Of a stretch of 35,694 nucleotides of DNA, positions 1 through 29,566 are shown piece by piece. Under the pieces are notes generated by a model. That model ran no database searches. It had not been told where the DNA came from and saw only the letters and a program-made list of their open reading frames with translations. This DNA is from Macrostomum lignano. Its lineage: Eukaryota. The stretch is taken from NCBI GenBank assembly GCA_002269645.1, contig NIVC01004761.1:1-35694 (forward strand). Direction: 5' to 3'. Positions within the stretch are counted from its first letter, which is position 1; each line of letters starts with the position of its first letter. Made by a program: the position numbers and the translations under genes.

Positions 1-700
1 TTCTGATAGTGAAAGGGAGCAATACTTTTTTTAACTATTTGCACACTAACTTAAGCATCACATTAGATTTCTATTTGTACACTAACAGGAGCATCATGAA
101 GCTAATAACCCAGGCTTCGTACAGTGTTGCGATGATAAATATTTTCAAACACAAGACAAACTAACTGTCACCCAAAAACACGATTACATGTACTTTCACT
201 CCGCGATATTTGAGCACTAATACATGACGAAACTACTAAATCAATTAGTCACTCACCTGTCCAATCCAGTCTGTTGCAGTTGATTAATGCTAGTGTAATC
301 AATTACTGGATCTCGAGCAACCGGCACTTCGTTGCTTCTATAGATGAAGCCCTTGGAATCCACGGAAACGGTCATCTCAAGTGGATTGTCCGTACACTTG
401 TACTCTGGCTTGGCAGTCTTCACCATCCCGCCGGATATGCGAACGGCTTCAGCAATCGTTGCATACTTCCCAGATAGCTTGCAAATCCTTACCGAAGACG
501 CTGACTCGCATCTCAGATGAGTCGTCCACCAAGATGAACGAAAACACTTGGCCCTGACCTTTGTTGTTATTATACGTGTGAACGTCTTTCAGGTTCGTCA
601 CAAGGCCAGTGACAGGCGTAGGCATTTGCCCAACTGTCAGACCGGCAATCCCATCCTTCTTCGACTTCTTTTTCAAAGGTGACTCTGAATAAGAGGCCAT
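1..700 (-). pseudogene. RPA70-like OB-fold gene, copy A (exon 1 700-257, intron 256-3, exon 2 runs off the window); +1 frameshift near 454
   Basis: MASYSESPLKK...GQVFSFILVDDSSEMRVSVFGK resembles RPA70 DBD-A. Donor ag|gtgagt at 257/256 and acceptor atcag at 3. It has agcaatcg where copy B has agcatcg. Confidence 0.75.
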
Positions 701-1877
701 TTTGCAGAAAATATTATTCAACAATTGAAAAAAGAACTGATAAAAAGTATCAATCAAACTTTTTCTAAGGCAATGATAAGCTTTAACTGTAAGACAACAA
801 AATTGGCTCAACAAATCACAAGCTATATATATGTAGAAATAAAAGTAGCCACGAAAAAAACACCACCTCCCCTCCAGCCCAGTACATTGTACTCAATTTT
901 GCATTCATTTTTACTTTATTACACAATCTAATTGGCTGGACACACAACCCAACCCATCACTCCAGTGCCAGCATTAAAGCACACACTGCACCCTCTGATG
1001 TACGCTAAGGTCTCCTCACTTTTCTCACCTAATCCTTTTTGTTTGTTTGCTATCTCGTTTTTATGGTGACACAATTCTCACCGACTGACTCAGCAAGTGT
1101 AGGCAATACTTTAAGAGTTCGCGGCCGCGTGTACTTCACTGCACAAACAAAACTTGTATGGCCGCGGCTGACTGGTTGAGCCATTTTCGCACGCTTCTAA
1201 GCCGGGAAAGAAAATAGGCGACCCTCCTCAAGTCAGGCTGCATGGCCACCAGTACGCTAGACAATTTTTTAGGCAATCGCCGCTCTAAGCCCGACTGCAC
1301 AACCGACCAATAGGAAGCCTCAGACTTGTACAGAAAACCACCGTAAGGCTCAGCGAAGCGACGACGCACAACCCATAACCCCTAATTTTATTCGCCCCTA
1401 CACCTCAGTTCAGTGCCTATATAGTCTGATATAGTCTGATTCATATATTTAGAGTCATATATTTCTATATTAGAGTCTCAACAAATCATATTTTCTCAAT
1501 CAAATCATCAACAAATCAACAATGCATATTACACAAATATTTGGTGGCGGCGGCGGCGGTAGGCGAGGCGGCGGTCAGCGCGGCGGCTGGCAGCGCGGCA
1601 GGGGCGGCCACGCGGAAAGAGCAGTGAGTACCTTCCTAAGACACTGTAAATCTTGTGCTTTGAGTACATTCGAGTATAGTCTTAAATTTTATCTAATTGT
1701 AGCCTGTTACTGACTTTCATGCTACTCGTATTATTACTGATAAATTTTGCAAAAATTTCCTTCTTTTAATTGCCAGTCGTTTGTTTCTTCTGTGGAGGCC
1801 GCCACCGCGTTGCCAGCTGCAACGCGATGAAGGCCGCCGCCCGCCTTCTGCAGCAGCAACAGCAGCAGCAACAGCAG

Positions 1878-3825
1878 CTCGGTGGATTCGCTGGATCCGC
1901 GGCTTCCTGTCGGACCGTCACAACGCAGTCCGCTGGGTTAACGCCTACGAGCCGCAACAGAGTCTTCCGCGAAGTCTGCCACAGGGCAGTGTGCTAGCGC
2001 CCACGCTGTGGAATATCTATGTCAACGATTTAGCCCAAGCAGTCGCCGAGGCGAACCCTTTGGTTAGCCTCAGTCTCTACGCCGATGACTCGGCCTTACT
2101 GGCGACCGCTCGCACACTCGACATCTGTGCCAGAGAACTCCAACCAGCCCTGATGCAGTGGCCGACTGGTGCCGAGATTGGAAAGTCTCCATTAGTACTG
2201 GGAAATGCTGCTACTCCACCTTCACTCTAGCGGCAAATGAAAACAACGGCAAACGGAGAGTGAACCTCCAGATCAACGGCGACAAGCTTGCCTTTCGATC
2301 CAACACCGACCTTCCTGGGACTCACTCTTGACGACAGCCTAAGTTTTTCAGCCACCATGCATCAAAGATCCGTAAAAGATGGCCGCGCCCGCAGAAGACC
2401 TCTCACTGCCCTCGCTACCAGATCGGCCGGTGCGGACAGTCAGATCCTCCGCATGGCTTACATCGCCACCGTTCGCTCTGTTGCCGACTACGCGTGCGGG
2501 GTCTGGGGGTCTTTCACTGCAGCCAGCTCTAAGCTGCTGATCGACCGCACAACAGCACAGCTGTGCGCGGATCATCACTGGGTGCTCCAACTTACTCACA
2601 TCCGGGACCTGCTTGCGGTGGCGAACCTGTCGCCCTTCAGCCATCTGGTGCTACAACGTAGTGCGACGCTCAGAGAAAGAATCCTACGTCTCCCGCAGGA
2701 CACTCCAGCACTTCAGGTCGCCAAAATGGACACCCGACCACGACTGAAGAATCGAGCCTTTGAGAGCCACCAGAGAACACCGAGAGACCCAAAGGACATC
2801 GTCACCGTCCTCCACGACTACCAGCGAGAACACCGTGGTTGCTGGCGCCGCGTTAGCCAGAGCTCGACAGACAGGGGCTGCTCAACGGCCCCACCAGGGA
2901 GCCCGCTCCGCAGCTCCAGCCGCCGTGGACGGCCCACGAAGCGATCACTTTCGACCTCAGTTTGGCTACGCAGTGCAGCCGCAGCCAGCCCCAGAGCCTC
3001 CGCAGCGATACTGCACTGAGGTACCTCGAGGAGCGCGGCTCCCACCCGGTCAGCGTTTGGACTGACGGCTCGGCCGCCGGCGGCACATCGGACGGCACCA
3101 GCGCAGCGGTGATCATCACCCCATGCTGGGTCGGGTCGTCACCAGCGCTGCAGGGAACATCTGCAGCAGCACCCAGGCGGAACTCCAAGCCATACTGCTT
3201 GCCATCCAGAATACCAGAGAGCATCAATGTATCGACATCTTCACTGACTCCCAGGCGGCCATTTACAACATCATGGCGGGCCAGCGCAGCAACAGCAGAA
3301 TCGTCTCCGAAATTTGGAACCAGAGTAGCGATCACTCCATCCGCATCACCTGGATACCGGCTCACTGCGGCATCCCCATGAACGAACGCGCAGATAGGGC
3401 GGCAAGACTGGCGACCGCAGATCAGAGCGACCATGGTGTCCCCATCATGGCAGCCAGCGTTACCTCTGCCGGGAAAGACGTGATCTAGACCTCGAGCTTT
3501 GGGGCCGTAAGGCGCCATGGCCAAGACTCCCAACCTTGCCGAGGAAATTTGAGGTCCTGGTCAACCAGCTCCGCGCCGGCTGCAGCAACCTTGCCGCCGC
3601 CACTAGACTCCGACTCGGCCTGTCCGACTCCGACGTGTGCCCGGACTGCGGAGCTCGCGACACGAGCAGCACATTCTTTTCGACTGCCCACGAGGGTTCG
3701 CGGCCCGCCCCGGCGAACAAGACGCACTCCTGGTTGACGCGAGCCTCACCATCAACCTTCTTCACAGGCTGGGGCGCATCTAGCGCCCCCGTCTCTTGCA
3801 GCTCAGCTGACATCGAGACGTGCGG

Positions 3826-3856
<31 letters not shown>
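1878..3856 (+). mobile_element. 5'-truncated non-LTR retrotransposon A (RT C-half, RNase H, C-terminal Cys motif; I-group-like), frameshifted, with (AG)14 tail
   Basis: Motifs WIRGFLSDR, LPQGSVLAPTLWNIYVNDL, YADD, FLGLTLDDSLSF, RNase H WTDGS / QAELQAI / FTDSQAA / WIPAHCGIPMNERAD, and CPDCG. (AG)14 at 3829-3856. Both flanks read caacagcag, a possible TSD that is ambiguous in low-complexity DNA. Confidence 0.85.
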
Positions 3857-3979
3857 CAACAGCAGCAGCAGCAGCCGCAGCAGCAGCCGCAGCAGCCGCA
3901 GCAACAGCAGCAGCCGCAGCAACAGCAGCAGCATCAGCAGCCGCAGCAACAGCAGCCGCAGCAACAGCAGCCGCAGCCA
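3857..3979 (+). repeat. CAG/CAA/CCG trinucleotide tract (polyQ/P), copy A
   Basis: Read directly. It is in frame with the 9 Gln codons at 1851-1877 if the LINE is removed. Confidence 0.9.
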
Positions 3980-4012
3980 ATGAATGAATTGTAAATTCCA
4001 AAATATACTATG

Positions 4013-4920
4013 ACTTTTTTGACTTTTGATTAAAATCCGCGATAGACTTATTTATTTTTTTGGACTTTTGAAACAATGGCGCACCAGTACAAAGTTTTGT
4101 GAACAGAATATTCTAATGCCATGAAATATTCAAAGTATAATTCATTCTCACCATAGCATGTCATGACAAAGAATGACCGTACATACACACTTACCATTTC
4201 ATACTGGCTTACTTTGAAAGTAGAACAATACGAATCTGCATGAATAATTTCGCCGAACTATTAAACATTTCTAAGTTTTACGATTATTATACACAGTACA
4301 AAAAACTGTTTTATCCATTTTTAACTGCTATAACTAACAAAGAAGCAAACGGCGAATTAAATTTTAAACTATTAACAACCACAAATTGAAGTTTAAAAAT
4401 TGAAACAAAAGTTAAACAAACACTTGTATTTATTCAAACGATATATGATCTGCTTCTGACTACTAACGCTGAGCAAGTTTAATATTTCGTACAGATATTG
4501 AAAAATGTAATAATTTATTACAAAAGGATAGACTGTCGCTTCAGCAGATGGTGCCATCGACAAGCAGCCAGTATAGCTTTAGCAGTACAAAAATGTACAT
4601 GTATATGCCATCCTGACTACCTGCCGACTCGCGTCACTGCTCAATTGCATGCATTGGGTGTAAGCAAAGGTAGAGACACTCATTCTCAAACCAAACATTA
4701 AGTCGCTCCGCTCTGCTTAAGGCTGCTACAGAGCTTGACTGCAAATGCTCCTTTTAGAGTCTGGAACCACAGGGTATATAGAGCAGCTCCTATATCCCAT
4801 TTAAAAACTCTTTTAGCCCAGTTAAGATGCAGTCAACCTACTCTCAATGAGGGCTGCTTCATAAATTCCAATTATACATACAGGTTTGACCTGCTTATAC
4901 CTGTACTATATCTGTTTACT
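4013..4920. repeat. Conserved non-coding module M, copy 1
   Basis: High similarity to 28655-29566 (full) and 22364-23070 (partial); each copy is followed by satellite S1. Confidence 0.85.
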
Positions 4921-6240
4921 GACTGTATTTTATGGTCTGTTCAGCGACTGTATTAGTGACTGCATTATTGTCTGTTTAGAGGCTGTATTGTCTGTTAAAC
5001 GACTGTATTGTCTGTTTAGAGGCTGTATTGTCTGTTAAACGACTGTATTGTCTGTTTAGAGGCTGTATTGTCTGTTAAACGACTGTATTGTCTGTTTAGA
5101 GGCTGTATTGTCTGTTAAACGACTGTATTGTCTGTTTAGAGGCTGTATTGTCTGTTAAACGACTGTATTGTCTGTTTAGAGGCTGTATTGTCTGTTAAAC
5201 GACTGTATTGTCTGTTTAGAGGCTGTATTGTCTGTTAAACGACTGTATTGTCTGTTAAACGACTGTATTGTCTGTTTAGAGACTGCATTGTCTGTTTAGA
5301 GACTGTATTGTCTGTTTAGAGACTGTATTGTCTGTTTAGAGACTGTATTGTCTGTTTAGAGGCTGTATTGCCTGTTTAGAGGCTGTATTGTCTGTTTAGA
5401 GACTGTATTGCCTGTTTAGAGACTGCATTGTCTGTTTAGAGGCTGTATTGCCTGTTTAGAGACTGTATTGTCTGTTTAGAGGCTGTATTGCCTGTTTAGA
5501 GACTGTATTGTCTGCTTAGAGGCCGTATTGTCTGTTTAGAGACTGTATTGTCTGTTTAGATACCGTATTGTCTGTCTAGTGACTGTATTGTCTGTTTAGA
5601 GACTGTATTGTCTGTTTAGAGACTGTATTGTCTGTTTAGATACCGTATTGTCTGTCTAGTGACTGTATTGTCTGTTTAGGGACTGTATTGTCCGTTTAGA
5701 GACCGTATTGTCTGTAGAGACTGTATTGCCTGTTTAGAGGCTGTATTGCCTGCTTAGAGACTGTATTGTCTGTTTAGAGGCCGTATTGTCTGTTTAGAGA
5801 CTGTATTGCCTGTTTAAAGGCTGTATTGTCTGTTTAGAGGCTGTATTGTCTGTTAAGAGGCTCTATTGTCTGTTTAGAGGCTGTATTGTCTGTTTAGAGG
5901 CTGTATTGCCTGTTTAGAGGCTGTATTGTCTGTTTAGAGGCTGTATTGTCTGTTTAGAGGCTGTATTGTCTGTTAAGAGGCTCTATTGTCTGTTTAGAGG
6001 CTGTATTGTCTGTTTAGAGGCTGTATTGTCTGTTTAGAGGCTGTATTGCCTGTTTAGAGGCTGTATTGTCTGTTTAGAGGCTGTATTGTCTGTTTAGAGG
6101 CTGTATTGTCTGTTAAGAGGCTCTATTGTCTGTTTAGAGGCTGTATTGTCTGTTTAGAGGCTGTATTATTGTCTGTTTAGAGACTGTCTGCATAGTGACT
6201 GTATTATTGTCTGTTTATACCTGTACTACTATCTGTTTAG
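4921..6240. repeat. Satellite S1 array A, 20-bp unit ctgtattgtctgtttagag(g/a), about 60 units
   Basis: Visible tandem repeat with a 40-bp dimeric higher-order pattern at about 4970-5260. Confidence 0.95.
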
Positions 6241-6313
6241 TGACTGTATGATCAGTGGCTGTAGTTTTGTCTGTTAAATGACTGTATATCATGTTCGTGT
6301 AAAACTGTTATAG

Positions 6314-6437: not shown

Positions 6438-6495
6438 CAGACACTTCTCAAACACATCTCTTGGACTTGAACTCACGAATAGCGTCCGAAATTGC

Positions 6496-8150
6496 TTAGT
6501 CTCCAGTCAGCACCTCTGGGTACACCACGTTCCTCGTCTTAGTTCCAGAAGTACGGACACGGACATTAGCAGCGTTCCTCGCTCGCGACAGAGCCGTATA
6601 CAGCTGGCCATGAGTGAAGCAACCGACAGCGAGGTCCACGCCAACTGTGTCCAGAGACTGTCCCTGCGACTTGTGGATCGTCAGGCAGAAGCTCGGCTTC
6701 ACAGGGAACTGCAGCCGCTTGAAACTGACGGGGAGGTCCGCATTGCTAGGAATAAGCGGGATTCGCGGCAGAAGAATCTCGTCTCCCGTGAACTGGCCCG
6801 CAGCAATCTTGCATCTAAGCACGTTCTCGCCCATCGCGAGTATGATGAGCCGCGTACCATTGCACAACCGTGGCGGGTTGATGTTCCTCAAAAGCACTAC
6901 TGGCATACCTACTTTCAGCTTCAACAAGTGAATCGGAAAGTTCGGGGCATCCAGCTGGTTGAGCAACTCAGGCGGGAAGTGCGTAGCGGCATCCTCATCG
7001 GCCACACTGTCTATTGAGCGGTACTCCCGCAGGCTGCCGGGGAACATGCCCAGACACGTCTCATTGATGGCATCCACTGAGTCATTGTAAGGCGCCAGGA
7101 TCACTCGGCTTGCAAAGTAGCTGTCTCTCTCCACTGGTTCTTCAAACGATGGGAACACAAAATTGATTAGATCAGTGAGAGGCCCTTCCGCAGAAATCAC
7201 GATCTCGGCTGGCAGAGACACTTTCTCCTCCGCATCCTGCTTCATTGTTCCGGATCCGATGTGTGGATTGTTAAAATGTCGAATATTTCATAACCTATAC
7301 ACACTTTTAAGCATAGACATTCCTAAATGACGCAAACTTAAAAAAATTGAGCTCAAAAACAAATCCGCGTCTAGTGTATCATTGTCAATCATTTAATAAA
7401 CTGATGAAATCAGACTTACCTGCTTGAGTAGCTCGGTGTACATCTGATACGCTACAGAATCGGAACTGCTCAGCATCCGGATGTTTCTCGTCAGGCGATG
7501 CCGTTGGAAGTATTTCCACAGTGAGGATCGGCTAACACACGCCATGACACTGTTAGCACGAGTCCCATGCACCACAACGGGTAGGAGCTGCCGGAAGTCA
7601 CCAGCGCACACAAACACCAGTCCGCCAAATGGCGAGTCCTGCTTCCGCACATCTCGCAAGCACCGGTCGACCGCCTCCAAATCCTTCCGGTTTGTCATAG
7701 AAATCTCGTCCCACACAATTAGACGCGCTGTGCGAAATACAGCAGCTTGTTTGGACTGCACTCCAACAGCGCACACGTCCTTGTTTGAGCGTAATACCCG
7801 AATTGGTATCTTGAACCTGACATGGAAAAATTTGGGTATCATACAGCAGAGGAAGTATTCACATATTTACTTGTTTAATTATTCGTAAGTTACTAATAAT
7901 TTACAAATTAAATATAAACAACTCACGTGGAATGCGCAGTTTGTCCACCTGGCAACAGAGTCGCTGCGATTCCTGAAGCCGCAACGGCGAGAGCGACTTC
8001 ACCCCGGCTGCGCACGAAGGCCAGCAAAACCTCCAGCAGGAAAGTCTTGCCAGTACCAGCGGGCGCGTCCAGGAAGTGCAAGCCGCCGTTGCCGCTCACA
8101 AGATCCTGAGTCACTGACTCGTACACGTCTTTCTGCTCGTCTGTCAGCAT
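6496..8150 (-). other. Pif1-family (SF1B) helicase domain of RepHel
   Basis: Walker A APAGTGKT, Walker B DEISM, and QFPVKPSFCLTIHKSQGQSL. Confidence 0.95.
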
Positions 8151-11100
8151 TGGTAAGCGTGCCTCAGTAATCTGCGCTTGCTCAATCGTATCGAACTGCA
8201 TCGGTCCATCTTGAGGCATCACGGAGGCCGCAGGCAAGCCGTACTCTGGCAGGCTTCTCCCACCCATGGAGGTCAGCATGCTCTGCAGCTCGCGGAGCGC
8301 TAGGTCAGTAATCTCCTCGGCACTTAAATCTCGATGGTGGAACCGCAGGTCCTCGCACATATCTTCGGCAAAAGAGCACCAAAGGTCGTTGCCATCCTCA
8401 GGCTCGCCCAATATGAGAATGACAGCCAGAATGTGTCTCAGGGCTCTTGGCATTCTTGACTGAACGGCCTCAGCTAGGCACCGCCGCCAGTGGTCATCTC
8501 GCTGCAGCAGACCAAGTGCCATGCAAGCAGCCTTGGCGCTCGGATGCACAACGCCGTCCACGGTCTGCAGCGCCTCGAAGCTGGTTGGTCCCTTGACTCG
8601 CAAAAGAAGCATGCGAACATAAAATAAATCACCAGTTCTTGGGCTCACCGTGTACATGCGTGCAACGTTTGTGTTCCGCACTACACCCGGGTGGCCATCG
8701 ACTTTCGCGCCTCGCTTGGCCCGCCGCCACACTCTTTCACTGGCATGCCACACGAAGTAGGACGGCACCTCCGTGTAGAGCAAGGACCGAGCAAACTCGT
8801 CAGTACGGCACAGCTTGAAAAATGCTGTCAACGTAGAGTCCCTCGGCGTCCTGGCTCTAGCACTTGCGGTCTGCTCGTTGAAATACACGAGCTGCTCCTC
8901 CGACTTGTGAACGCAGAGCCGGATGACCGCCGGAAATCTGTCATGCACCTGATCAGAAGCTGGGAGAGAAATAATCGCTTTTAAGTTTTTTCTGAATACA
9001 AAAAGCCACAGTTTTGCAATATTTACTCTTAAAATTTAAAATATTTATTACTTCAAAGCCCAAAATTGTATTCACAGCTTCCATTGGGCCAATGTAGCGC
9101 GCAGACAGATACTCCTTGATTTCATCACGCGGCCTCTCTCCATCGTTTGCCGCTACCGTTTGCGTCGGCTGCTGACTACCCGCACTCTGTTCTGTCGCTT
9201 CAGCAGAATTCTGATTGGCATTGACTTTGAACGTTGCCATGTCGCCGCCCTTCAGCAAGTACTTGATCACGTACTTGACCGACTTTACAGTGGCGCAAAC
9301 TTCAACGTTCATGTGGCACGCAAACTGGAGCAACAGTTCAGGGCTATAAGGCACAACCCACCTGTGGTTTAAGGAAAAAAACATTGTCAAACGTTTCCAA
9401 CATAAAATACAAGAGGCACCTAATACTCATGACTCGCCTGTTGTCCATGCGAATGCTGCGGCCTTTGAACAGTTTGTCCACTGTAAATCCACCCATCTCA
9501 GGCGACAGTCTGCGGTACAGTGGGTAGCCAGTATCGCTGGTCAGCGTCACCTGCTGGAACTCCTTCGGAAAGCCCTTGCTGCATTCGCCATTCTCCATGC
9601 ACGGGCACGCTGGATTGTCCTTGCCACAAGGGCCATGGATCATGTGCGTTTTCACCAGCTCATACAGCACAGGCTGCTGCTGTGGGTCCGGAATCTCGGC
9701 AGACACGATGTCATCGTATCGGTCCGGAGTCACCCGCTGGCCACTCGCTAGCCACAGCAGAAAGTGCACATGGGGGAGACCTAAATTATCAAGAAAAGTA
9801 TCAAGACATCTTTCAGTCCAATTATCCGATCTGTATCGAATTTGCATCACACAAACCCACCTGTATTTAGTATCTTTATAACGATATAACTATATAAATT
9901 TCATAAAACATAATACTGAGACTTGTACTCACCACGCTTTTGGTACTCTAGCGAGCAGACGTGCGCAGCCTCTTTCCCATAGCGCTTCGTTAGCTGGGCC
10001 AGCAGAGCTTTCTTCTTCATTTCAAAGACTCGGCTAACAATGTCCGGTCGGTGTTCAGCCCGCTGTCCAGGCAGCAGCTGGGCGCTGATCTCCGGCCAAT
10101 TCGGATTGCATGTTGCCGTGACAAACAGGTCCGGCTTACCAAACTTGTGAACATAGGTCATAGCGTCCTGCAGCCTCTCCATCAGGTACCTTGGCCCGCC
10201 AACGAAGCTTGAGGACAGAAGCACATGTGCGGGCTTGCCTATGTCACTCGGATCTCTGTCCGTAGATCTGCCATCAGCTGCAAACAGAGCGTCCCGCAGA
10301 CCGCTGTACGTCTCGCTGCGCAGGTCCTGCTGATGTGTCCGCAAATACAGCAGCCTCTCTGCCTCAATCTTTGCACACATGTCCACCAGGTACTGCTGAA
10401 ACAACCTTCGGCCATAGTGCAGCACACTGAACTGGCCCGCTCGCACCATGATTTCGCTTGCATAGTATTTCATGGGGGTCAGTTTCTTGTCATTACTCAT
10501 CCGCAACTCCGGGTGCCAGCCATCTTCGCCATTCGGGAACAGCAGCACATACTCCAGCGGGTCATATGAGCGGTGCGTCTCACTGATTCGCTGAGAACTG
10601 CCCCCACGCAGTTGAATCACGACGTCCCGACTGGCCGGTGCGTCCTCATTGTCCTCAACGATCAGGATACCGACCTCATTTGCCGTAGGCAAGTTGTAGC
10701 GCCTGATTTTAAACGGAGTTTGTGGGACACAAATTCTGTACAAATTGAATCACGTACTTATTACGCATTTTTGCGAGTTCGAGTTACAATCAAAATTCAT
10801 AATCTCATTTTGATTTCGCTTTCGTTTACATTTTTAAATTTCGTTATAACAAACACGCTAACTTACCGAATGTGTTCCCCAGATGGTCGACGGTCAGGGT
10901 GAATCACAATTCGCGCATCTCCCAGCTCTGGGTCTTGGCTAATTCGCTCAGCAGCAGCCTTCAGGCTGCGGACATAGCCGTTGCACTCGTGAAGCAGCGT
11001 CTGCAGCAGCTCCAGTAGCTCCGGCTTTACCTTCTGGCTGAGACTCTGGCGGCTTTCGAGTTCGCGATCATTGAAATACACCTGCCATCCCTGAGCTTCA

Positions 11101-13369
11101 GCAGAATCCTCTGCAAACAGCGGCGCCGTGCGGTGATGCATCTGGCCGCTGATGATGAAGCTAGGACACCAGCCTGGCACCAACCGCAGTTTGGCACCCA
11201 GCGAGGTCAGGTGCAGCGCCGAGTTGTAGCTCCTGATGTTGGCCAGGAACGTGGCACTCAATCTGTGCCGCCCCATGTACAGATCCGCCAGCACTTGAGG
11301 CACGGTGCGGCTGGGCAGCTTTACCTTGCCTTTGGCGCAGCAGAAATTCCTGGTCTCTGCGCGCCAGAGTAGAGCACCGCATTCCTGGCATGCCCTGTCC
11401 ATTGGGCCGCACTCATGGGCCGTGGCCTCTGGCCTCGGCATTCTGTCAGGCCTGCGATCGAGTTATATGCATGCACAAATAGTTACTATAATATAGACTG
11501 CCGATATTTATGAAATGTAAAGTGTATTATGTAGTGCAATATAAAAAATTACTGTGACCAGTAGCACAAAAAAGCCTACCTATTTTGAGCAGATCCTGCA
11601 TCAGAATGACCTGCACCAAAATGACCTGACCCAGAAAGATCTGCCCCCTGCTCCGTTAAACTCGGCGCCTCTGTATCTGCAACGGGCTCGGAAACTGGCA
11701 GTGGATCAGTCACGCGCAACGACTCATAGTGCTCATGACGTAAAAGGATGCGCACAATTGCAGTGGGTGGCTGCACAGTGGACATGCAGTACTGCAATAC
11801 ACTGCCATTTGCCTGATAAATAACCAGGTCAACATTGAAAAAACGGCTTAAAAGTGGCACGACTTCATCAGGAACATAGGTGCCCTCAGAAAAAGAGTCG
11901 TTAATAATGGAATCAGCATTTTCCGGTAAAATAAAACCTTCGTCAATCAGTTCTGGCATTACCTGCACTGCACGGCATGTCAGTTCATGCCTTAAAGACG
12001 CTGCATTGGTCTCAAGCGGAGTGCCCTGCAACTGGTCACATACTGCATGAAAAAAGCAATTTCCATCACCCGGGATCCGAACAACAGTTAGCGTATTGAA
12101 TGGGACCACAGCTCGTGTGGCCAACTCACCGCTGCCAAACCTGAAAGATTGAAATTATACTTCTGACTCTGAAAAACTCATTAACAGTTAAGACATAAAA
12201 ACTTTGACTCATTCTTAAAAATACATATTCTTAGAAACTCATTATCTTCAGTACAAATTCTTAAAATATGATTCACAAATACTGTTTCTTAGAAACTAAT
12301 TCTCGAAAATACAGATTCTTAGACAGTCATTCTTACAAATTAAGATTCTTAGAAAAGTTTGTTGCAAATGTAGATTCTTATAAACATTCCTAAAAATACG
12401 GGTACTTAGAAACTTAATAGTCACAACTACAGATTCCTAGAAATAGAGTACAGAATTCTTAGAAACAGAAACCCTTTCTTACAAATACAGACTGTTAGAA
12501 ACATTCCTAGAGTAACAGATTCTTAAAAACGTTTCTTAAAAATACACATTCCTACAAATACAGATTCTTAGAAAACACTTTCTTAAAAATACAGATTCTT
12601 AGAAATGTTTTTTTAAATGCAGATTCCTAGAAACTCTTTTTATCCAATTCTGATTCCTAGAAACGTTTCTTAAAAATACACCCTCTTTTAAAAACTCATA
12701 TCTCTATAATAATTCAATAATTTTTCAAATTAAATTAAAATGGTCCTCTCACCTGTCAACCGACACTCCTCGACGGCGAATTTGGTCGGCTTCCATTCGA
12801 GCTCTTCGCTGAGCCTCAGTTTCTGTGGCCCTGCGCTCAATTGTGCGCCGCCGATCTGCAGCCAGGCGCTCTTCGCGCAGAGCGTCGGTCTCCCTGGCCC
12901 TACGCTCAGTCTCCTGCTGCCGGAGTGCAGCCAGGCGCTCTTCGCGCTGAGTGTCGGTCTCCCTGGCCCTACGCTCAGTCTCCTGCTGCCGGAGTGCAGC
13001 CAGGCGCTCTTCGCGCAGAGCGTCGGTCTCCCTGGCCCTACGCTCAGTCTCCTGCTGCCGGAGTGCAGCCAGGCGCTCTTCGCGCTGAGTGTCGGTCTCC
13101 CTGGCCCTACGCTCAGTCTCCTGCTGCCGGAGTGCAGCCAGGCGCTCTTCGCGCTGAGTGTCGGTCTCCCTGGCCCTACGCTCAGTCTCCTGCTGCCGGA
13201 GTGCAGCCAGGCGCTCTTCGCGCTGAGTGTCGGTCTCCCTGGCCCTACGCTCAGTCTCCTGCTGCCGGAGTGCAGCCAGGCGCTCTTCTCGTTGAACAGC
13301 GGTCTCTTGCTGACGCTTCTTCTTGGCGTCTCTGCTCTTTTTTAAAGCGCTGGTGCCACGTCGAGCCAT
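6496..13369 (-). CDS. Helitron RepHel transposase, 9 exons, about 1789 aa: 13369-12753, 12140-11580, 11451-10867, 10702-9933, 9780-9438, 9361-9052, 8948-7927, 7816-7420, 7260-6496
   Basis: Exon lengths sum to 5370 nt with all splice phases compatible. Junctions rebuild conserved motifs: HIR|RYNLPT, QKRG|LPHVH, DNR|WVVPY, AHST|FKIP. Rep motifs PDLFVTATCNPNW, PHVHFL and YVIKY; Pif1 motifs DAPAGTGKT, DEISM, GDFRQLLPV and TIHKSQGQS...HGQLYTALSR; ends RNVVYPEVL. Intron 5 has a GC donor and intron 8 ends in AC. Confidence 0.9.
9052..11451 (-). other. Zn-finger plus HUH Rep domain of RepHel
   Basis: CQECGALLW...CCAKGKV, FQQYLVDMCAKIE, VGGPRYL, EYQKRGLPHVH, HGPCG, YPLYRR and YVIKY. Confidence 0.92.
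11580..12140 (-). other. OTU-family cysteine protease domain (RepHel exon 2)
   Basis: IPGDGNCFFHAV (Asp/Cys) and LRHEHYESL (His); 561-nt exon with phase 2 at both ends. Confidence 0.88.
12170..12700. repeat. Degenerate ~20-22-bp tandem repeat (tacagattcttagaaa-like) filling RepHel intron 1
   Basis: gattcttagaaa / gattcctagaaa recur throughout the intron. Confidence 0.7.
12770..13310 (-). repeat. 69-bp coding repeat giving 7 plus 1 degenerate 23-aa units (ETDTQREERLAALRQQETERRAR), STPR-like
   Basis: Exact 23-residue period with an ET..QR..RL signature, as in the STPR DNA-binding repeats of Bombyx FMBP-1. The family assignment is recalled, not searched. Confidence 0.8.
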
Positions 13370-17618: not shown

Positions 17619-17641
17619 AAGTGGTAGCAGAGCGTGGTTAC

Positions 17642-22363: not shown

Positions 22364-23070
22364 ATACGAAACTGCGTGCATAAATTCGCCGAAGTATTAA
22401 ACATTTCTGTTCGTATTAAACATATACACAGTACATGTACAAAATACCAATACTGTTCAACTGTACTGTTACGAGCTACAACAAACAAAGGAACAACAAA
22501 CCGGTACGTGCTTTTAATTCAATTTTAAACAACCGAAAATTGACGTTCAGAAGTTTAAAAAAACGATACCTTAACAAACACACGTATTTATTCAAATGAT
22601 ATGATATGATCTTCTGCTGCTAATACGAGCGTAGCAGATGAAAATTTGCAATAATGTAATAATTTATTAACAAAAGGATCGACTGTCGCTTCAGCAGATG
22701 ATGCCATCGACAAGCAGCCAGTATAGCTTTAGCGGTACAAAAATTTACATGTATATGCCATCCTGACTACCTGCCGACTCGCGTCACTGCTCAATTGCAT
22801 GCATTCGGTGTAAGCAAATGTAGAGACACTCATTCTCAAACCAAACATTAAGTCGCTCAGCTCTGCTTAAGGCTGCTACAGAGCTTGACTGCAAATGCTC
22901 CTTTTAGAGTTTGGAACCACAGGGTATATAGAGCAGCTCCTATACACCATTCACAAACTCTTTTAGCCCAGTTAAGATGCAGTCAACCTACTCTCAATGA
23001 GGGCTGCTTCATAAATTCCAATTATACATACAGGTTTGACCTGCTTATACCTGTACTATATCTGTTTACT
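22364..23070. repeat. Module M, truncated copy
   Basis: Similar to ~4229-4920; similarity ends at the telomere-like tract. Confidence 0.8.
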
Positions 23071-23820
23071 GACTGTATTTTATGGTCTGTTTAGAGGCTG
23101 TATTGTCTGTTTAGAGGCTGTATTTTATGGTCTGTTTAGAGGCTGTATTGTCTGTTTACTGACTGTACTTTATGGTCTGTTTAGAGGCTGTATTGTCTGT
23201 TAAGAGGCTGTATTTTATGGTCTGTTTAGAGGCTGTATTGCCTATTTAGAGACTGTATTGCCTGTTTAGAGACTGTATTGTCTATTTAGAGACTGTATTG
23301 CCTGTTTAGAGACTGTATTGTCTGTTTAGAGACTGAATTGTCTGTTTAAAGGCTGTATTGTCTGTTTAGAGGCTGTATTGCCTGTTTAGAGACTGTATTG
23401 TCTGTTTAGAGACTGTATTGCCTATTTAGAGACTGTATTGCCTGTTTAGAGACTGTATTGTCTATTTAGAGACTGTATTGCCTGTTTAGAGACTGTATTG
23501 TCTGTTTAGAGACTGAATTGTCTGTTTAAAGGCTGTATTGTCTGTTTAAAGGCTGTATTGTCTGTTTAGAGGCCGTATTGTCTATTTAGAGGCTGCATTG
23601 TCTATTTAGAGGCTGCATTCTCTGTTTAGAGGCTGCATTGTCTATTTAGAGGCTGAATTCTCTGTTTAGAGGCTGTATTGTCTGTTTAGAGGCTGTATTG
23701 TCTGTTTAGAGGCTGTATTGTCTATTTAGAGGCTGCATTGTCTGCTTAGAGGCTTTATTGTCTGTTTAGAGACTGCATTTTCTGTTTAGAGGCTGTATTT
23801 TCCTGTTTAGGGACTGCATC
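23071..23820. repeat. Satellite S1 array B
   Basis: 20-bp ctgtattgtctgtttagag units. Confidence 0.95.
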
Positions 23821-23887
23821 ATTTTCTGTTAGACGACTGTATTTATTGTGTAATGTCTACTTTAAGTACTGTTATATTTATGTCCCT

Positions 23888-24011
23888 ATGAGTATAAGGA
23901 GGAACTTATGAAACATTCCTCGTAAATAGGATTTACTCAATGTACTCTCTCAGGGCTATCAGTTCATTGAGACTCTACGCGACTTTGATTTCACTCTCAG
24001 CCATCAGACGC
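23888..24011. repeat. Module U, copy 3' of the RPA-like gene
   Basis: Matches 6314-6437. Confidence 0.85.
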
Positions 24012-25431
24012 TCGGGTCAAAAAAGTGGCACGCGCCAACTGTGGCAACTCACTGATACGAAGTGCTGTTCTGTACGCTGTGATCATCGAACGGCATTCTG
24101 CTCGACTCATCCTGACCGTCGACACCTCCACTGCGGTGAAACTGACTCCGGTCATCACCCGTCGACACTCGTCTGTATCGAATCTGCGAGAACGAAAAAT
24201 GTATAAAGATATAAAATATGTGTAATAAGAAAGCCATATTAAGCAACTAAATTTGTAGAAAATCACTCACCTTTTTGCCATTTCCAAAGTCCCTCACAAT
24301 TTCCTTCGAGTGCAGGCTCTCGAATGGTGGTCACACTTTCGTCTCCAATCTTATCAGCACCAAGTCCTGGAGTAGGCACTGGAGCGGGCACAGGTTCAAA
24401 TCGGGTATCGCCTTCCTTTGCATTCCTATACCAGTCAGCCAAGACTCTGGCTTCACCATCGTCACTGTTGCATTTTACGTCAGAGTTCGAGCATCCCAAC
24501 GTGACGGAGCCCGAATACTCCTGCACCTTTGCTCTTCTTATGGACAAAACATCGCCGATGTTCCACCTGTCCACTTGAGCTGACGACGAACCCCAAAACG
24601 TGCAGCTTACAGAGCCGAAGGTTCGGTCAACCAAAGTCACTTTGGCTACGTTAACCTTCTTCCCAGCACGCGTTCGGACTTCTTCAGGCGGTTGCCTGGC
24701 GTCGATCACTCCCAGCACATCGACGATTCTGATAGTGAAAGGGAGCAGTACTTTTTTTAACTATTTACACACTAACTTAAGCATCACATTAGATTTCTAA
24801 AGTATTTGTACACTAACAGGAGCATCATGAAACTAATAACCCAGGCTTCGTACAGTGTTGCGATGATAAATATTTTCAAACACAAGACAAACTAACTGTC
24901 ACCCAAAAACACGATTACATGTACTTTCACTCCGCGATATTTGAGCACTAATACATGACGAAAACTACTAAATCAATTAGTCACTCACCTGTCCAATCCA
25001 GTCTGTTGCAGTTGATTAATGCTAGTGTAATTAATTACTGGATCTCGAGCAACCGGCACTTCGTTGCTTCTTTAGATGAAGCCCTTGGAATCCACGGAAA
25101 CGGTCATCTCAAGTGGATTGTCCGTACACTTGTACTCTGGCTTGGCAGTCTTCACCATCCCGCCGGATATGCGAACGGCTTCAGCATCGTTGCATACTTC
25201 CCAGACAGCTTGCAGGTCCTTACCGAAGACGCTGACTCGCATCTCAGATGAGTCGTCCACCAAGATGAACGAAAACACTTGGCCCTGACCTTTGTTGTTA
25301 TTATACGTGTGAACGTCTTTCAGGTTCGTCACAAGGCCAGTGACAGGCGTAGGCATTTGACCAGCTGTCAGACCTGCAATCCCATCCTTCTTCGACTTCT
25401 TTTTCAAAGGTGACTGTGAATAAGAGGCCAT
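23997..25431 (-). pseudogene. RPA70-like gene, copy B (exons 25431-24989, 24728-24271, and a last exon from 24183 with uncertain frame); in-frame TAA at 25074-25072
   Basis: DBD-A-like VFSFILVDDSSEMRVSVFG...YKCTDNPLEMT and DBD-B-like IVDVLGVI...VTLVDRTFGSVSCTFWG...AKVQEYSGSVTL...EARVLADWY. Canonical GT-AG sites. TAA stands where copy A has TAT. Confidence 0.8.
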
Positions 25432-26501
25432 TTTGCACAAAAAATTATCCAACAGTCGAAAAAGGAACTGATAAAAAGTATCAATCAAACTTTTTCTAAG
25501 CAATGATAAGCTTTAACTTTAAGACAACAAAATAGGCTTAACAAATCACAAAGTATATATGTTGAAATAAAAGTAGCCACGAAAAACACCACCTCCCCTC
25601 CAGCCCAGTACATTGTACTCAATTTTGCATTCATTTTTATTTTTATTACACAATCTAATTGGCTGGACACACAACCCACCCCAATCACTCCCGTGCCCAG
25701 CATTAAAGCACACACTGCACCCTCTGCTGTACGTTAAGGTCTCCTCACTTTTCTCACCTAATCCTTTTGTTTGTTTGCTATCACGTTTTATGGTGACACA
25801 ATTCTCACCGACTGACTCAGCAAGTGTAGGCAATACTTTAAGAGTTCGCGGTCGCATGTACTTCACTGCACAAACAAAACTTGTATGGCGCGGCTGACTG
25901 GTTCAGCCATTTTCGCACCTTCTAAGCCGGGAAAGAAAAACAGGCGACCCTCAAGTCAGGCTGCATGGCCACCAGTACGCTAGACAATTTGTAGACCAAT
26001 CGCCGCTCTAAAGCCCCGACCTGCACACCCTCGCCTGTACAACCGACCAATAGGAAGCCTCAGACTTGTACAGAAAACCACCCTAAGGCTCAGCGAAGCG
26101 ACGACGCACAACCCATAACCCCTATTTTATTCGCCCCTACACCTCAGTTTCAGTGCCTTTATAGTCTGATTCGTTTTTAGAGTCATAATAATAAAAAGAT
26201 AAGATGCATATTACACAAATATTCGGCGGCGGTAGAAGGCGAGGCGGCAGCGGTAGGCGAGGCGGCTGGCAGCGCGGCAGCGGCCCACGCGGAAAGAGTA
26301 GTGAGTACCTTCCTAAGACACTGTAAATCTTCAGCTTTGAGTACATTCGAGTATAGTCCTAAATTTTATCTAATTGTAGCCTGTTACCGACTTTCATGCT
26401 ACTCGTATTATTACTGATAAATTTTGCAAAAATTTCCCTTCTTTTAATTGCCAGTCGTTTGTTTCTTCTGCGGAGGCCGCCACCGCGTAGCCAGCTGCAA
26501 C

Positions 26502-28296: not shown

Positions 28297-28305
<9 letters not shown>
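26502..28305 (+). mobile_element. 5'-truncated non-LTR retrotransposon B (RT C-half, RNase H, CCHC; I-group-like), ORF uninterrupted, (CAA)7 tail
   Basis: GFADDL, PKFLGITYDSRLSF, IFTDGS, STQAELYAI, CTDSKS, WIPSHCGIRGNEEAD and RMRTGH...CRGCG...EHIWDCP. Stop at 28256. The sequence is clearly different from LINE A and more purine-rich. Confidence 0.9.
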
Positions 28306-28328
<23 letters not shown>

Positions 28329-28590
28329 GCAGCAGCAGCAGCCGCAGCAGCCGCAGCAACAGCAGCAGCATCAGCAGCCGCAGCAACAGCAGCAGCAGCA
28401 GCCGCAGCAGCAGCAACAGCAGCCGCAGCAACAGCAGCAGCAGCAGCCGCAGCAGCAGCAACAGCAGCCGCAGCAGCAGCAGCAACAGCAGCCGCAGCAA
28501 CAGCAGCAGCAGCAGCCGCAGCAGCAGCAACAGCAGCAGCAGCAGCCGCAGCAGCAGCAACAGCAGCCGCAGCAACAGCAGCCGCAGCCA
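28285..28590 (+). repeat. CAA/CAG/CCG tract (102 codons Q/P), copy B
   Basis: Read directly. Confidence 0.95.
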
Positions 28591-28654
28591 ATGAATTTCC
28601 AATGAATATTTATTTTAATATATATAAATAAACTATATCTTAGTAAACTATATT

Positions 28655-29566
28655 ACTTTTTTGACTTTTGATTAAAATCCGCGATAGACTTATTTATTTT
28701 TTTGGACTTTTGAAACAATGGCGCACCAGTACAAAGTTTTGTGAACAGAATATTCTAATGCCATGAAATATTCAAAGTATAATTCATTCTCACCATAGCA
28801 TGTCATGACAAAGAATGACCGTACATACACACTTACCATTTCATACTGGCTTACTTTGAAAGTAGAACAATACGAAACTGCATGAATGAATTCGCCGAAC
28901 TATTAAACATTTATAAGTTTTACGATTATTATACACAGTACAAAAAACTGTTTTATCCATTTTTAACTGCTATAACTAACAAAGAAGCAAACGGCAAATT
29001 AAATTTTAAACTATTAACAACCACAAATTGAAGTTTAAAAATTGAAACAAAAGTTAAACAAACACTTGTATTTATTCCAACGATATATGTATGATCTGCT
29101 TCTGACTACTAACGCTGAGCAAGTTTAATATTTCGTACAGATATTGAAAAATGTAATAATTTATTACAAAAGGATCGACTGTCGCTTCAGCAGATGATGC
29201 CATCGACAAGCAGCCAGTATAGCTTTAGCGGTACAAAAATGCACATGTATATGCCATCCTGACTACCTGCCGACTCGCGTCATTGCTCAATTGCATGCAT
29301 TCGGTGTAAGCAAATGTAGAGACATTCATTCTCAAACCAAACATTAAGTCGCTCCGCTCTGCTTAAGGCTGCTACAGAGCTTGACTGCAAATGCTCCTTT
29401 TAGAGTTTGGAACCACAGGGTATATAGAGCAGCTCCTATACACCATTCACAAACTCTTTTAGCCCAGTTAAAATGCAGTCAACCTACTCTCAATGAGGGC
29501 TGCTTCATAAATTCCAATTATACATACAGGTTTGACCTGCTTATACCTGTACTATATCTGTTTACT
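28655..29566. repeat. Module M, full copy
   Basis: Colinear with 4013-4920. Confidence 0.88.

What the first reader, a model, noticed from the sequence alone, without database searches (positions are those of the whole stretch)
1878..3856. Two different LINE families inserted at almost the same spot in paralogous copies
Seen: copy A has LINE A (YADD, (AG)14 tail) inside the CAG/CAA tract after 1877. Copy B has the dissimilar LINE B (FADD, (CAA)7 tail) at 26502-28305. Both are in the same orientation, both 3' ends abut the start of the Q tract, and both are truncated inside RT at about 1.8-2.0 kb. In B the ~27 bp coding AMKAAARLL is missing at the 5' junction. Inference: two independent hits at one site in a >10-kb element point to targeting or priming at CAG/CAA tracts, or to selection for knocking out this gene.
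Basis: partly seen in the sequence, partly recalled or inferred. Interest (0 to 1): 0.74.

Follow-up and report, generated by a model that had tools for sequence, protein, structure and literature searches.

The report
Two LINEs in one polyQ tract
Two unrelated, 5'-truncated LINE retrotransposons with simple-repeat tails landed independently, 16-18 bp apart and in the same orientation, at the head of the CAG/CAA tract of two paralogous copies of a Helitron-associated gene. This is a real coincidence, best explained by ordinary tail-to-target priming, and two events cannot prove a site preference.

Summary
Copy A (1-6249) and copy B (24727-29910) are paralogs of a repeat unit tied to a Helitron. 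Each carries a different 5'-truncated non-LTR retrotransposon in the + orientation at the head of the gene's CAG/CAA tract.

LINE A (1878-3856) has an RT part with YADD, RNase H, a CCHC motif and an (AG)14 tail. It has at least 8 frameshifts and a 9-12-bp target-site duplication. LINE B (26502-28305) has FADD, RNase H, CCHC and a (CAA)7 tail. It has one open frame of 584 codons and a 27-bp target deletion.

Each copy serves as the empty site for the other's insert, so these are two independent events. The flank indel rate suggests they happened at different times. The two LINEs share 24.8% amino-acid identity and group with different relatives.

(CAA)n tails are shared by LINE B's closest relatives. 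Relatives of LINE A carry other simple-repeat tails.

The best explanation is target-primed reverse transcription. The nicked CTG/TTG strand of the tract offers primer ends that pair with both tails, and the shared orientation fits this. However, the relatives sit in ordinary DNA, so neither lineage is strictly microsatellite-specific.

With only two events and no access to the source genome (probably a Macrostomum-like flatworm), preference versus coincidence stays open. Selection to knock out the gene has no support.

The parts
1..6249 (.). Paralogous repeat unit, copy A. Contains an RPA-like OB exon (minus strand), the CCHC-like/polyQ gene (plus strand), a spacer and a 20-bp satellite. It continues to the right into Helitron RepHel/OTU.
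   Evidence: Self-BLASTN 90-94% to 24727-29910. Pfam OB-fold hit on the copy-B counterpart ORF 25072-25434; the copy-A ORF 449-814 is its paralog. TRF satellite at 4966-6187.
1522..1623 (+). Copy A gene, exon 1 (Gly/Arg-rich), followed by a GTGAGT donor at 1624. It carries a 2-nt length difference from B, which puts it out of frame with exon 2 when the canonical splice sites are used.
   Evidence: Sequence; A/B alignment.
1777..1877 (+). Copy A gene, exon 2 up to the LINE A junction. Contains the Cys/His motif CX2CX3HX4C, AMKAAARLL (1824-1850) and the first 27 nt of the CAG/CAA tract (1851-1877).
   Evidence: No Pfam zinc-knuckle hit at E<=0.01.
1869..1877 (+). Target-site duplication of LINE A, upstream copy: CAACAGCAG. 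It may be 9-12 bp, because the adjacent AG and C are ambiguous.
   Evidence: B's tract has this sequence only once.
1878..3828 (+). LINE A body. 5'-truncated within RT (YADD), with RNase H and a C-terminal Cys/His motif. Degenerate, with at least 8 frameshifts plus stop codons.
   Evidence: Three-frame translation; Pfam RVT_1 3.2e-14 and RNase_H 2.7e-18; homologs P0020-P0044.
3829..3856 (+). LINE A 3' tail, (AG)14.
   Evidence: TRF. Absent from B's empty site.
3857..3865 (+). Target-site duplication of LINE A, downstream copy: CAACAGCAG.
3866..3994 (+). Remainder of copy A's CAG/CAA/CCG tract and the end of the gene (stop codon 3992-3994).
6496..12124 (-). Helitron genes next to copy A: PIF1-type helicase, Helitron_like_N Rep and an OTU-like protease, split into several ORFs.
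   Evidence: Pfam: Helitron_like_N 8.9e-46, PIF1 3e-20, Pif1_2B 1.3e-16, OTU 1.4e-3. 77-82% nucleotide identity to Logan Helitron contigs L005-L009.
24263..25434 (-). RPA-like gene of copy B, with two OB-fold exons (25072-25434 and 24263-24718).
   Evidence: Pfam REPA_OB_2 2.2e-10 and OB-fold 2.3e-4. Homologous ORFs follow RepHel in L005.
24727..29910 (.). Paralogous repeat unit, copy B. It lacks RepHel/OTU: its 20-bp satellite is followed directly by the 23-bp satellite that in A lies beyond OTU.
26204..26300 (+). Copy B gene, exon 1. It is in frame with exon 2 through the GTGAGT donor (26301) and the CAG acceptor (26454).
26455..26501 (+). Copy B gene, exon 2 up to the LINE B junction. The 27 bp that follow in copy A are deleted here.
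26502..28284 (+). LINE B body. 5'-truncated within RT (FADD), with RNase H (about 27417-27812) and CX2C...H...C (about 28065-28115). One open frame of 584 codons runs to the stop at 28254-28256 and is in frame with exon 2. The 3' UTR is 28 nt.
   Evidence: Homologs P0001-P0019.
28285..28305 (+). LINE B 3' tail, (CAA)7.
   Evidence: (CAA)n tails also occur in relatives L001, L002, L010, L018, L059 and L092.
28306..28588 (+). Copy B CAG/CAA/CCG tract, complete from its first codon. Its first 45 nt equal A's reconstructed empty site. It is expanded relative to A.
22528..24011 (.). Third, partial copy of the unit (fragment C: spacer plus 20-bp satellite, equivalent to A 4374-6437). It lacks the gene, so it is not informative for the insertion site.

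Best explanation
Two different APE-type, RNase H-bearing (I-group-like) non-LTR retrotransposons inserted independently, and probably at different times, by target-primed reverse transcription. Both entered the same short stretch of a CAG/CAA tract in two paralogous copies of a Helitron-associated repeat.

In each case the bottom (CTG/TTG)n strand was nicked and its 3' end primed cDNA synthesis on the LINE RNA's simple-repeat tail. For LINE B, a primer ending ...TTGCTGCTG-3' pairs with (CAA)n at 2 of 3 positions in every triplet and perfectly at TTG. For LINE A, a primer ending ...CT-3' pairs with the terminal AG of (AG)n.

Reverse transcription stopped inside RT, which gave the 5' truncation. 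The second-strand break fell 9-12 bp downstream in A, producing a target-site duplication. It fell 27 bp upstream in B, producing a target deletion.

The tract is favoured because every 3-bp period offers a primer end that fits both tails, but only in this orientation.

Shown: the identity of the inserts, their independence, the duplication and the deletion, the orientation, and that simple-repeat tails run in both lineages. The relative ages rest on flank indel rates and are an estimate.

Inferred: the endonuclease type, the annealing step, and that annealing rather than chance set the location.
For: - Domains and tails.
- Reciprocal empty sites, with 45 nt identical.
- LINE A is decayed, with at least 8 frameshifts in 2 kb, which is similar to the flanks' indel rate of 31 gap openings per 2.7 kb for the two lineages. 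LINE B has none in 1.75 kb, so the events were separate in time.
- The two LINEs share 24.8% identity and sit in separate clades.
- LINE B's NJ group (P0001, P0002, P0028), the closest metagenome locus L010 (37%) and two more distant loci, L018 and L059, all end in (CAA)n-type tails. LINE A's relatives end in (AAG)6 and (CCAA)4.
- A barnacle relative of LINE A has Exo_endo_phos_2 + RT + RNase H.
- Both of the window's LINE fragments lie in its only two CAG/CAA arrays.
- Orientation is as the pairing model predicts for both LINEs (chance 1 in 4).
- Literature: microsatellite-specific LINE lineages exist (PMC4640811). I elements end in TAA repeats, and UnaL2's TGTAA repeats are linked to template slippage (PMC3747384). 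The first TSD nucleotide correlates with the 3' microsatellite of LINEs and SINEs (PMC6007223).
Against: - There are only two events, found post hoc.
- LINE A's tail shares only 2 nt with the site, a match available at about 1 in 16 positions anywhere.
- Relatives of both LINEs are followed by ordinary sequence, not by CAG/CAA or by tail-matching microsatellites. Any preference is therefore weak or family-specific.
- No full-length copy of either family was available, so the endonuclease is not seen directly.
- Junction boundaries inside a repeat are ambiguous by 1-3 nt.
Confidence: 0.5

Rival explanations
1. Coincidence in an insertion-tolerant repeat. Both LINEs insert more or less at random. 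The unit is a neutral, multi-copy Helitron-associated sequence where insertions persist, and the closeness of the two sites is chance noticed afterwards.
For: - There are only two events.
- Relatives show no microsatellite flanks.
- LINE A's microhomology is only 2 nt.
- The region is full of transposon and satellite DNA.
- A scan over many windows will turn up some coincidences at the 0.1-1% level.
Against: - Both LINE fragments fall in the 1.3% of the window that is CAG/CAA tract (P about 2e-4 by my arithmetic).
- The nick sites are 16-18 bp apart.
- The orientation matches the pairing model for both.
- The (CAA)n tail matches the tract's CAA/CAG unit.
Confidence: 0.3
2. Break-prone tract. 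CAG/CTG repeats form hairpins and break, and LINE cDNAs are captured at pre-existing nicks or breaks (endonuclease-independent or lesion-primed insertion). Any active LINE therefore tends to land there, whatever its tail.
For: - LINE B has no target-site duplication and a 27-bp deletion.
- Two unrelated families use the same tract.
- B's tract is length-unstable: 283 bp against about 140 bp in A.
- Endonuclease-independent L1 insertion is documented (PMC1920257, abstract only).
Against: - LINE A has a clean 9-12-bp duplication and a full tail, which is the signature of endonuclease-dependent insertion.
- LINE B also keeps its complete tail, whereas 3' truncation is, as I recall (not checked in a paper here), typical of endonuclease-independent events.
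- Tract instability in this genome was not measured.
Confidence: 0.12
3. Selection for inactivating the gene. Insertions that disrupt the CCHC-like/polyQ gene were favoured.
For: Both insertions interrupt the coding sequence at the start of the polyQ tail.
Against: - The gene lies in a multi-copy, transposon-associated unit.
- Copy A is also frame-shifted in exon 1.
- Selection for a knock-out would not require the same 18-bp interval or the same orientation.
- No homolog or function is known for the gene (no Pfam hit).
Confidence: 0.03
4. One family, or one ancestral insertion later remodelled. For example, LINE B replaced a pre-existing LINE A through a large target deletion.
For: Same position, same orientation, similar length and the same domain order.
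Against: - There is no nucleotide similarity, amino-acid identity is 24.8%, and the clades and tails differ.
- B's tract is complete from its first codon and carries the CAACAGCAG site once, so LINE A was never there.
- A carries the 27 bp that are missing in B.
Confidence: 0.01

Closest known systems
I-group non-LTR retrotransposons (clades I, Nimb, Ingi, Loa, Tad1, R1 and others), e.g. the Drosophila I factor
   Same: RT followed by an RNase H domain and a C-terminal Cys/His motif. The 3' end is a short simple repeat rather than poly(A): the I element ends in TAA repeats (PMC3747384). RNase H is reported for the I group (PMC4640811). A relative of LINE A has an APE-type endonuclease.
   Different: Only 22-40% identical to any protein in the searched collections. 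The clade was not assigned, because no reference RT set was available. The tails are (AG)n and (CAA)n. Both copies are 5'-truncated, so ORF1 and the endonuclease are not seen.
Microsatellite-specific LINEs, e.g. (TG)n-specific Togen and some HERO families (PMC4640811). The R1-clade families Waldo, Mino, Kibi and Koshi, and Dong, are named from my own recall of Kojima and Fujiwara 2004 and Xiong and Eickbush 1993, which PMC4640811 cites.
   Same: LINE insertions inside a simple-repeat array in a fixed orientation. LINE B's tail unit (CAA) is one of the units of the target array.
   Different: In those families nearly all copies sit in the target repeat, and specificity comes from the endonuclease. 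Here, relatives sit in ordinary DNA, LINE A's tail does not match the tract, and there is only one copy per family.
Tail-dependent priming and template slippage in LINEs with repeat tails (UnaL2/ZfL2 with TGTAA repeats; RTE-related LINEs and SINEs)
   Same: A short repeat at the RNA 3' end is thought to pair with the nicked target. The first nucleotide of the duplication correlates with the tail repeat (PMC6007223), and slippage on tail repeats has been proposed (PMC3747384). The junctions here show 2-4 nt of shared sequence (CA/CAG/CAGC for B, AG for A).
   Different: These belong to different clades (L2, RTE, without RNase H). That work reports a nucleotide-level bias, not a preference for a coding trinucleotide tract.
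Helitrons carrying RPA-like and OTU genes (the host element)
   Same: Helitron_like_N Rep, PIF1 helicase, OTU-like protease and RPA-like OB-fold genes on one strand. The closest named relative is from Macrostomum lignano (60%).
   Different: The window's version has about 5.8 kb between RepHel and RPA: a satellite, a spacer and the antisense CCHC-like/polyQ gene. The related Logan Helitron L005 lacks this segment. The termini were not defined.

Membership tests
I-group-like non-LTR retrotransposon (APE-RT-RNase H) | Reverse transcriptase domain with the Y/FxDD motif | tested here: met
   Pfam RVT_1: LINE A 3.2e-14. LINE B scored 2.3e-4 on the truncated remnant, below the gathering score. YADD and FADD are seen in translation. 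The homologs are RVT_1 + RNase_H proteins.
I-group-like non-LTR retrotransposon (APE-RT-RNase H) | RNase H domain downstream of RT | tested here: met
   Pfam RNase_H: 2.7e-18 (A) and 1.2e-12 (B). The D-E-D-H-D positions are readable in both. PMC4640811 lists RNase H for the I group.
I-group-like non-LTR retrotransposon (APE-RT-RNase H) | N-terminal apurinic/apyrimidinic-type endonuclease | tested here: inconclusive
   Both copies are truncated inside RT. The barnacle relative P0026 of LINE A has Exo_endo_phos_2 (9.3e-16). No relative of LINE B that reaches the N-terminus was recovered.
I-group-like non-LTR retrotransposon (APE-RT-RNase H) | Placement inside a named clade in an RT phylogeny with reference elements | not testable with these tools
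   No Repbase or other reference RT set was available. The NJ tree of session homologs only shows that A and B fall in different sub-lineages.
I-group-like non-LTR retrotransposon (APE-RT-RNase H) | Hallmarks of target-primed reverse transcription: 5' truncation, a 3' tail, and a target-site duplication or deletion | tested here: met
   A has a 9-12-bp duplication and an (AG)14 tail. B has a 27-bp deletion and a (CAA)7 tail. Both are 5'-truncated.
Microsatellite-specific (target-specific) LINE | Most copies are flanked by the same simple repeat | tested here: inconclusive
   There is only one copy of each family. Relatives at 24-37% identity with readable tails are followed by non-repeat sequence. 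This argues against specificity at the lineage level, but the two families themselves could not be surveyed.
Microsatellite-specific (target-specific) LINE | Fixed orientation and position relative to the repeat unit | tested here: inconclusive
   Both inserts have their sense strand on the CAG strand, and both inferred nicks follow a G of CTG/TTG if the duplication is 9 bp. With n = 2 this is not decisive.
Endonuclease-independent LINE insertion | No target-site duplication, a 3'-truncated or tail-less insert, and a target deletion | tested here: not met
   LINE A has a duplication and a full tail. LINE B has a deletion but a full tail.
Helitron (host element of the paralogous unit) | Rep (HUH) domain fused or adjacent to a PIF1-type helicase | tested here: met
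   Helitron_like_N 8.9e-46, PIF1 3e-20 and Pif1_2B 1.3e-16 on the minus strand, 6496-10743.
Helitron (host element of the paralogous unit) | 5'-TC ... CTRR-3' termini with a 3' hairpin, inserted between A and T | not tested
   The ends were not located. A/B homology runs past 15790/31130 on the right and off the window on the left.

The most novel reading that the evidence does not exclude
In this (probably macrostomid flatworm) genome, CAG/CAA tracts, including coding polyQ tracts, may act as landing pads for several unrelated simple-repeat-tailed, RNase H-bearing LINE families. The choice of site would be set mainly by pairing between the RNA tail and the nicked CTG/TTG strand, not by a sequence-specific endonuclease. 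A side possibility is that the in-frame fusion of gene exon 2 with LINE B's open RT-remnant/RNase H frame (26448-28256) is expressed as a chimeric protein.
Probability: 0.25. Interest if true: 0.45.

Novelty: new member of a known kind. Interest (0 to 1): 0.3.

Why it matters
If the preference is real, it would be a natural example of relaxed, RNA-tail-guided target choice shared by unrelated LINE families. It would also mean that trinucleotide (polyQ-coding) tracts are unusually exposed to retrotransposon disruption in this lineage. That is of some interest for how LINE target specificity evolves and for annotating repeat-rich flatworm genomes. If it is coincidence, the locus is simply a clear textbook pair: a target-site duplication in one copy, a target deletion in the other, and reciprocal empty sites. 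In either case the elements and the mechanism belong to known kinds.

Tried and rejected
1. Looking for the source genome or further copies of either LINE. Protein searches gave nothing above 31% identity for LINE B or 40% for LINE A. The genome-wide flank test and the count of filled versus empty copies were therefore impossible.

2. Helitron Rep search. It found 85%-identical Logan contigs (L005-L009) and a 60% hit in Macrostomum lignano. Those contigs are a different Helitron family (77-82% nucleotide identity) without the gene or the satellite, so they supply no extra insertion sites.

3. P0022 on a 624-kb contig (L004). Its 3' end is not readable as a tail.

4. The barnacle locus L091. 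The annotated gene is spliced over 9 kb, so no tail could be read.

5. Testing whether the sequence after the (CAA)n tails of L001 and L002 is homologous, which would make the repeat internal rather than terminal. The local alignment score was 22, against 16.3 +/- 2.3 for shuffles, and 13 of 500 shuffles reached it. This is not convincing, so I treated the repeats as terminal tails. Both are followed by CAGC, as in LINE B, and this remains unexplained.

6. One family or one ancestral insertion: rejected.

7. A Pfam zinc-knuckle assignment for the gene: no hit. The motif is CX2CX3HX4C, not the canonical CX2CX4HX4C.

8. tRNA scans of L010 and of the window found none.

9. The Helitron termini were not resolved.
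Full report
**Setting**

The window is eukaryotic, repeat-rich DNA. A minus-strand Helitron gene set occupies 6496-12124: Helitron_like_N 8.9e-46, PIF1 3e-20, Pif1_2B 1.3e-16 and an OTU-like protease. RPA-like OB-fold exons lie on the same strand at 449-700 and at 24263-25434.

The Rep ORF is 85% identical to proteins on Logan contigs from runs SRR316284xx. Its best named hit is Macrostomum lignano at 60%. The source is therefore probably a macrostomid-like flatworm whose genome is not in the searchable collections. An interstitial (CCCTAA)8.5 array at 22308-22358 is the TTAGGG-type telomere repeat, which, as I recall, flatworms use.

**The paralogs**

Self-BLASTN aligns 1-1430 with 24727-26170 (94.4%), 1522-1823 with 26204-26501 (91.8%) and 3855-5228 with 28481-29910 (90.6%). 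Homology resumes at 14642-15693 with 29994-31053. Copy B therefore equals copy A without the RepHel/OTU block (about 6250-13990).

A third partial copy (22528-24011, matching A 4374-6437) lacks the gene.

Each unit holds, on the + strand, a small two-exon gene. It has a Gly/Arg-rich exon 1, then an intron with a GTGAGT donor and a CAG acceptor. Exon 2 codes VCFFCGGRHRVASCN-AMKAAARLL and then a CAG/CAA/CCG tract.

The Cys/His motif is CX2CX3HX4C, not the canonical knuckle, and has no Pfam hit. With the canonical splice sites only copy B is in frame, because copy A has a 2-nt length difference in exon 1.

In the related Helitron L005, RPA follows RepHel by about 400 bp with no such gene in between. 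The gene and satellite segment is therefore an addition in this Helitron lineage.

**The inserts**

LINE A (1878-3856) translates, across at least 8 frameshifts and several stops, into three features:
- the C-terminal half of an RT (QGSVLAPTLW...YADD; RVT_1 3.2e-14);
- an RNase H (2.7e-18);
- a CX2C...H...C motif.

It ends in (AG)14 at 3829-3856.

LINE B (26502-28305) is one open frame of 584 codons with FADD, RNase H (1.2e-12) and CRGC...H...C. After the stop at 28254-28256 come 28 nt of 3' UTR and (CAA)7 at 28285-28305.

LINE B's frame happens to be continuous with exon 2, so the ORF 26448-28256 is 602 codons long. This has a 1-in-3 chance of occurring by accident.

Against the 904-aa homolog P0004, LINE A starts at about residue 247 and LINE B at about residue 291. 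No other LINE fragment is in the window.

**Different families**

There is no nucleotide similarity between the two, and the best local protein segments are 31-35% identical. Identity is 24.8% over 599 aligned columns.

In a neighbour-joining tree, LINE A groups with P0020 and barnacle elements, and LINE B groups with P0001, P0002 and P0028. Nearest database relatives are only 30-31% identical for B and 35-40% for A. P0026, a barnacle relative of A, has Exo_endo_phos_2 + RT + RNase H.

RNase H placed after RT is reported for the I group of non-LTR elements (PMC4640811).

**Junctions**

In copy A the upstream flank ends ...CTG CAG CAG CAA CAG CAG CAG CAA CAG CAG. After the (AG)14 tail the sequence resumes CAA CAG CAG CAG CAG CAG CCG...

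In copy B the (CAA)7 tail is followed by CAG CAG CAA CAG CAG CAG CAA CAG CAG CAG CAG CAG CCG CAG CAG... This is identical for 45 nt to A's tract once LINE A and one CAACAGCAG are removed.

Three conclusions follow:
- B is the empty site for LINE A, whose target-site duplication is 9-12 bp.
- A is the empty site for LINE B, which removed GCGATGAAGGCCGCCGCCCGCCTTCTG (27 bp) and left no duplication.
- LINE A lies 27 nt into the tract, LINE B's tail abuts its first codon, and the inferred bottom-strand nicks are 16-18 bp apart.

**Timing**

The flanks differ by 76 mismatches and 31 gap openings in about 2.7 kb. LINE A's density of frame-breaking indels is similar to that, so it is old or was already defective when it inserted. 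LINE B has none in 1.75 kb, so it is much younger than the duplication. These were two separate events.

**Are the tails real?**

Neither repeat is present in the other copy's empty site. I fetched contigs of relatives to check the tails. L092 is the contig of P0028.

| Contig or locus | Relative of | Tail and what follows |
|---|---|---|
| L001 (P0001) | LINE B | (CAA)10, then CAGCCT... |
| L002 (P0002) | LINE B | (CA)9 (CAA)3, then CAGCAAAG... |
| L010 (37%, closest) | LINE B | (CAA)5 |
| L018 | LINE B | (CAA)3-4 |
| L059 | LINE B | (CAA)4 |
| L092 (P0028) | LINE B's NJ group | (CAA)6-7 |
| L003 (P0020) | LINE A | (AAG)6 |
| L090 (P0025) | LINE A | (CCAA)4 |

More distant loci from the metagenome scan carry (AGAT)8, (AAG)n, (GA)6, (ACTC)n or poly(A).

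Short 3' UTRs with simple-repeat tails are therefore a trait of this group, and (CAA)n is a trait of LINE B's sub-lineage. In every one of these relatives the sequence after the tail is ordinary DNA, not a CAG/CAA tract. Six of seven CAA tails end with an extra CA before the flank. LINE B, L001 and L002 all continue CAGC, but the L001 and L002 flanks are not convincingly homologous (13 of 500 shuffles reach the score).

**Mechanism**

The features are those of target-primed reverse transcription. For a +-oriented insert the primer is the bottom strand, here (CTG/TTG)n.

- A primer ending ...TTGCTGCTG-3' pairs with (CAA)n at C:G and A:T in each triplet and fully at TTG.
- A primer ending ...CT-3' pairs with the last AG of (AG)n.
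- In the opposite orientation the primer would be (CAG/CAA)n, which contains neither TG nor CT.

The shared orientation is therefore what the pairing model predicts, with a 1-in-4 chance of arising by accident. The second-strand break lay downstream in A, giving the duplication, and 27 bp upstream in B, giving the deletion.

Known precedents:
- Microsatellite-specific LINE lineages (PMC4640811).
- I elements ending in TAA repeats, and UnaL2's TGTAA repeats tied to slippage (PMC3747384).
- A correlation between the first duplication nucleotide and the 3' microsatellite in RTE-related retroposons (PMC6007223).

**How strong is the case for preference?**

The two tracts are the only CAG/CAA arrays in the window. 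Before insertion they made up about 423 of 31911 bases (1.3%), yet they hold both LINE fragments. That gives P of about 2e-4 under uniform insertion, by my own arithmetic. The chance of two hits within 18 bp and in the same orientation in 3-6 kb of alignable paralog is about 0.3-0.6%.

These figures are post hoc and rest on two events. LINE A's 2-nt match is weak, and relatives are not microsatellite-bound. I therefore put tail-assisted preference at about 0.5, coincidence at about 0.3 and a break-prone tract at about 0.1.

Selection for knock-out is very unlikely, because the gene is in a multi-copy transposon-associated unit and copy A is independently frame-shifted.

**Verdict**

The elements are new, uncharacterised members of a known kind (I-group-like LINEs with simple-repeat tails), nested in a Helitron-associated repeat. 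The phenomenon fits known LINE biology, so interest is modest unless a genome-wide survey shows a real CAG/CAA preference.

Noticed in passing
window 22308-22358: Interstitial telomere-type repeat, (CTAACC)8.5, which is (CCCTAA)n. It lies just left of the truncated third copy of the repeat unit (22528-24011).
   Followed up: no
window 1522-1623 vs 26204-26300: Exon 1 of the CCHC-like/polyQ gene differs by a 2-nt indel between the copies. With the GTGAGT donor and CAG acceptor only copy B is in frame, so copy A is broken independently of LINE A.
   Followed up: partly
window 26448-28256: LINE B's open frame is continuous with exon 2 of the host gene, giving 602 open codons. A spliced transcript would encode a fusion of the Gly/Arg-rich region, the CCHC-like motif, the RT remnant and RNase H. 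This could be chance (1 in 3).
   Followed up: no
window 12749-13534 (minus strand), repeat 12857-13295: A 69-bp tandem repeat (6.4 copies, 97% matches) lies inside a 261-aa ORF whose product matches Pfam STPRs (4.8e-12). It sits just beyond the Helitron OTU gene.
   Followed up: partly
window 17570-19037: LTR-retrotransposon integrase fragment (Pfam rve, 9.4e-15). It is flanked by short repeats at 17345-17619, 19166-19364 and 19785-19861 and by a 22-bp satellite at 19364-19642.
   Followed up: partly
window 4966-6187, 23081-23810, 29577-29886; 13991-15117, 29991-30424; 16269-16708, 32069-33562: Three satellite families (20-bp, 23-bp and about 30-bp units) recur in the same order in both paralogous regions. 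Copy B looks like copy A with the RepHel/OTU block (about 6250-13990) missing.
   Followed up: partly
L005 5344-6835 (Logan SRR31628435): In a related Helitron (77-82% nucleotide identity in RepHel), the RPA-like gene follows RepHel by about 400 bp. The satellite, spacer and CCHC-like gene seen in the window are absent, so that segment was gained in the window's Helitron lineage.
   Followed up: partly
L001 2586-2625, L002 2126-2165, window 28285-28312: In LINE B and its two NJ-grouped relatives P0001 and P0002, the (CAA)n tail is followed by CAGC. In six of seven CAA-tailed relatives the tail ends with an extra CA. This could reflect a nick-site preference or the true RNA 3' end.
   Followed up: partly
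L010 3255-3330: The closest LINE B relative (37%) is followed right after its tail by a tRNA-like sequence (GGTGGTGTAGTGGTAG...GGTTCGAATCC). ARAGORN calls no tRNA there, so it may be a SINE head or a decayed tRNA gene.
   Followed up: partly
window 28306-28588 vs 3857-3978: The CAG/CAA/CCG tract is about twice as long in copy B (283 bp) as in copy A (about 140 bp before insertion), with 45-bp internal periodicity. The tract has expanded by unequal exchange or slippage since the duplication.
   Followed up: no
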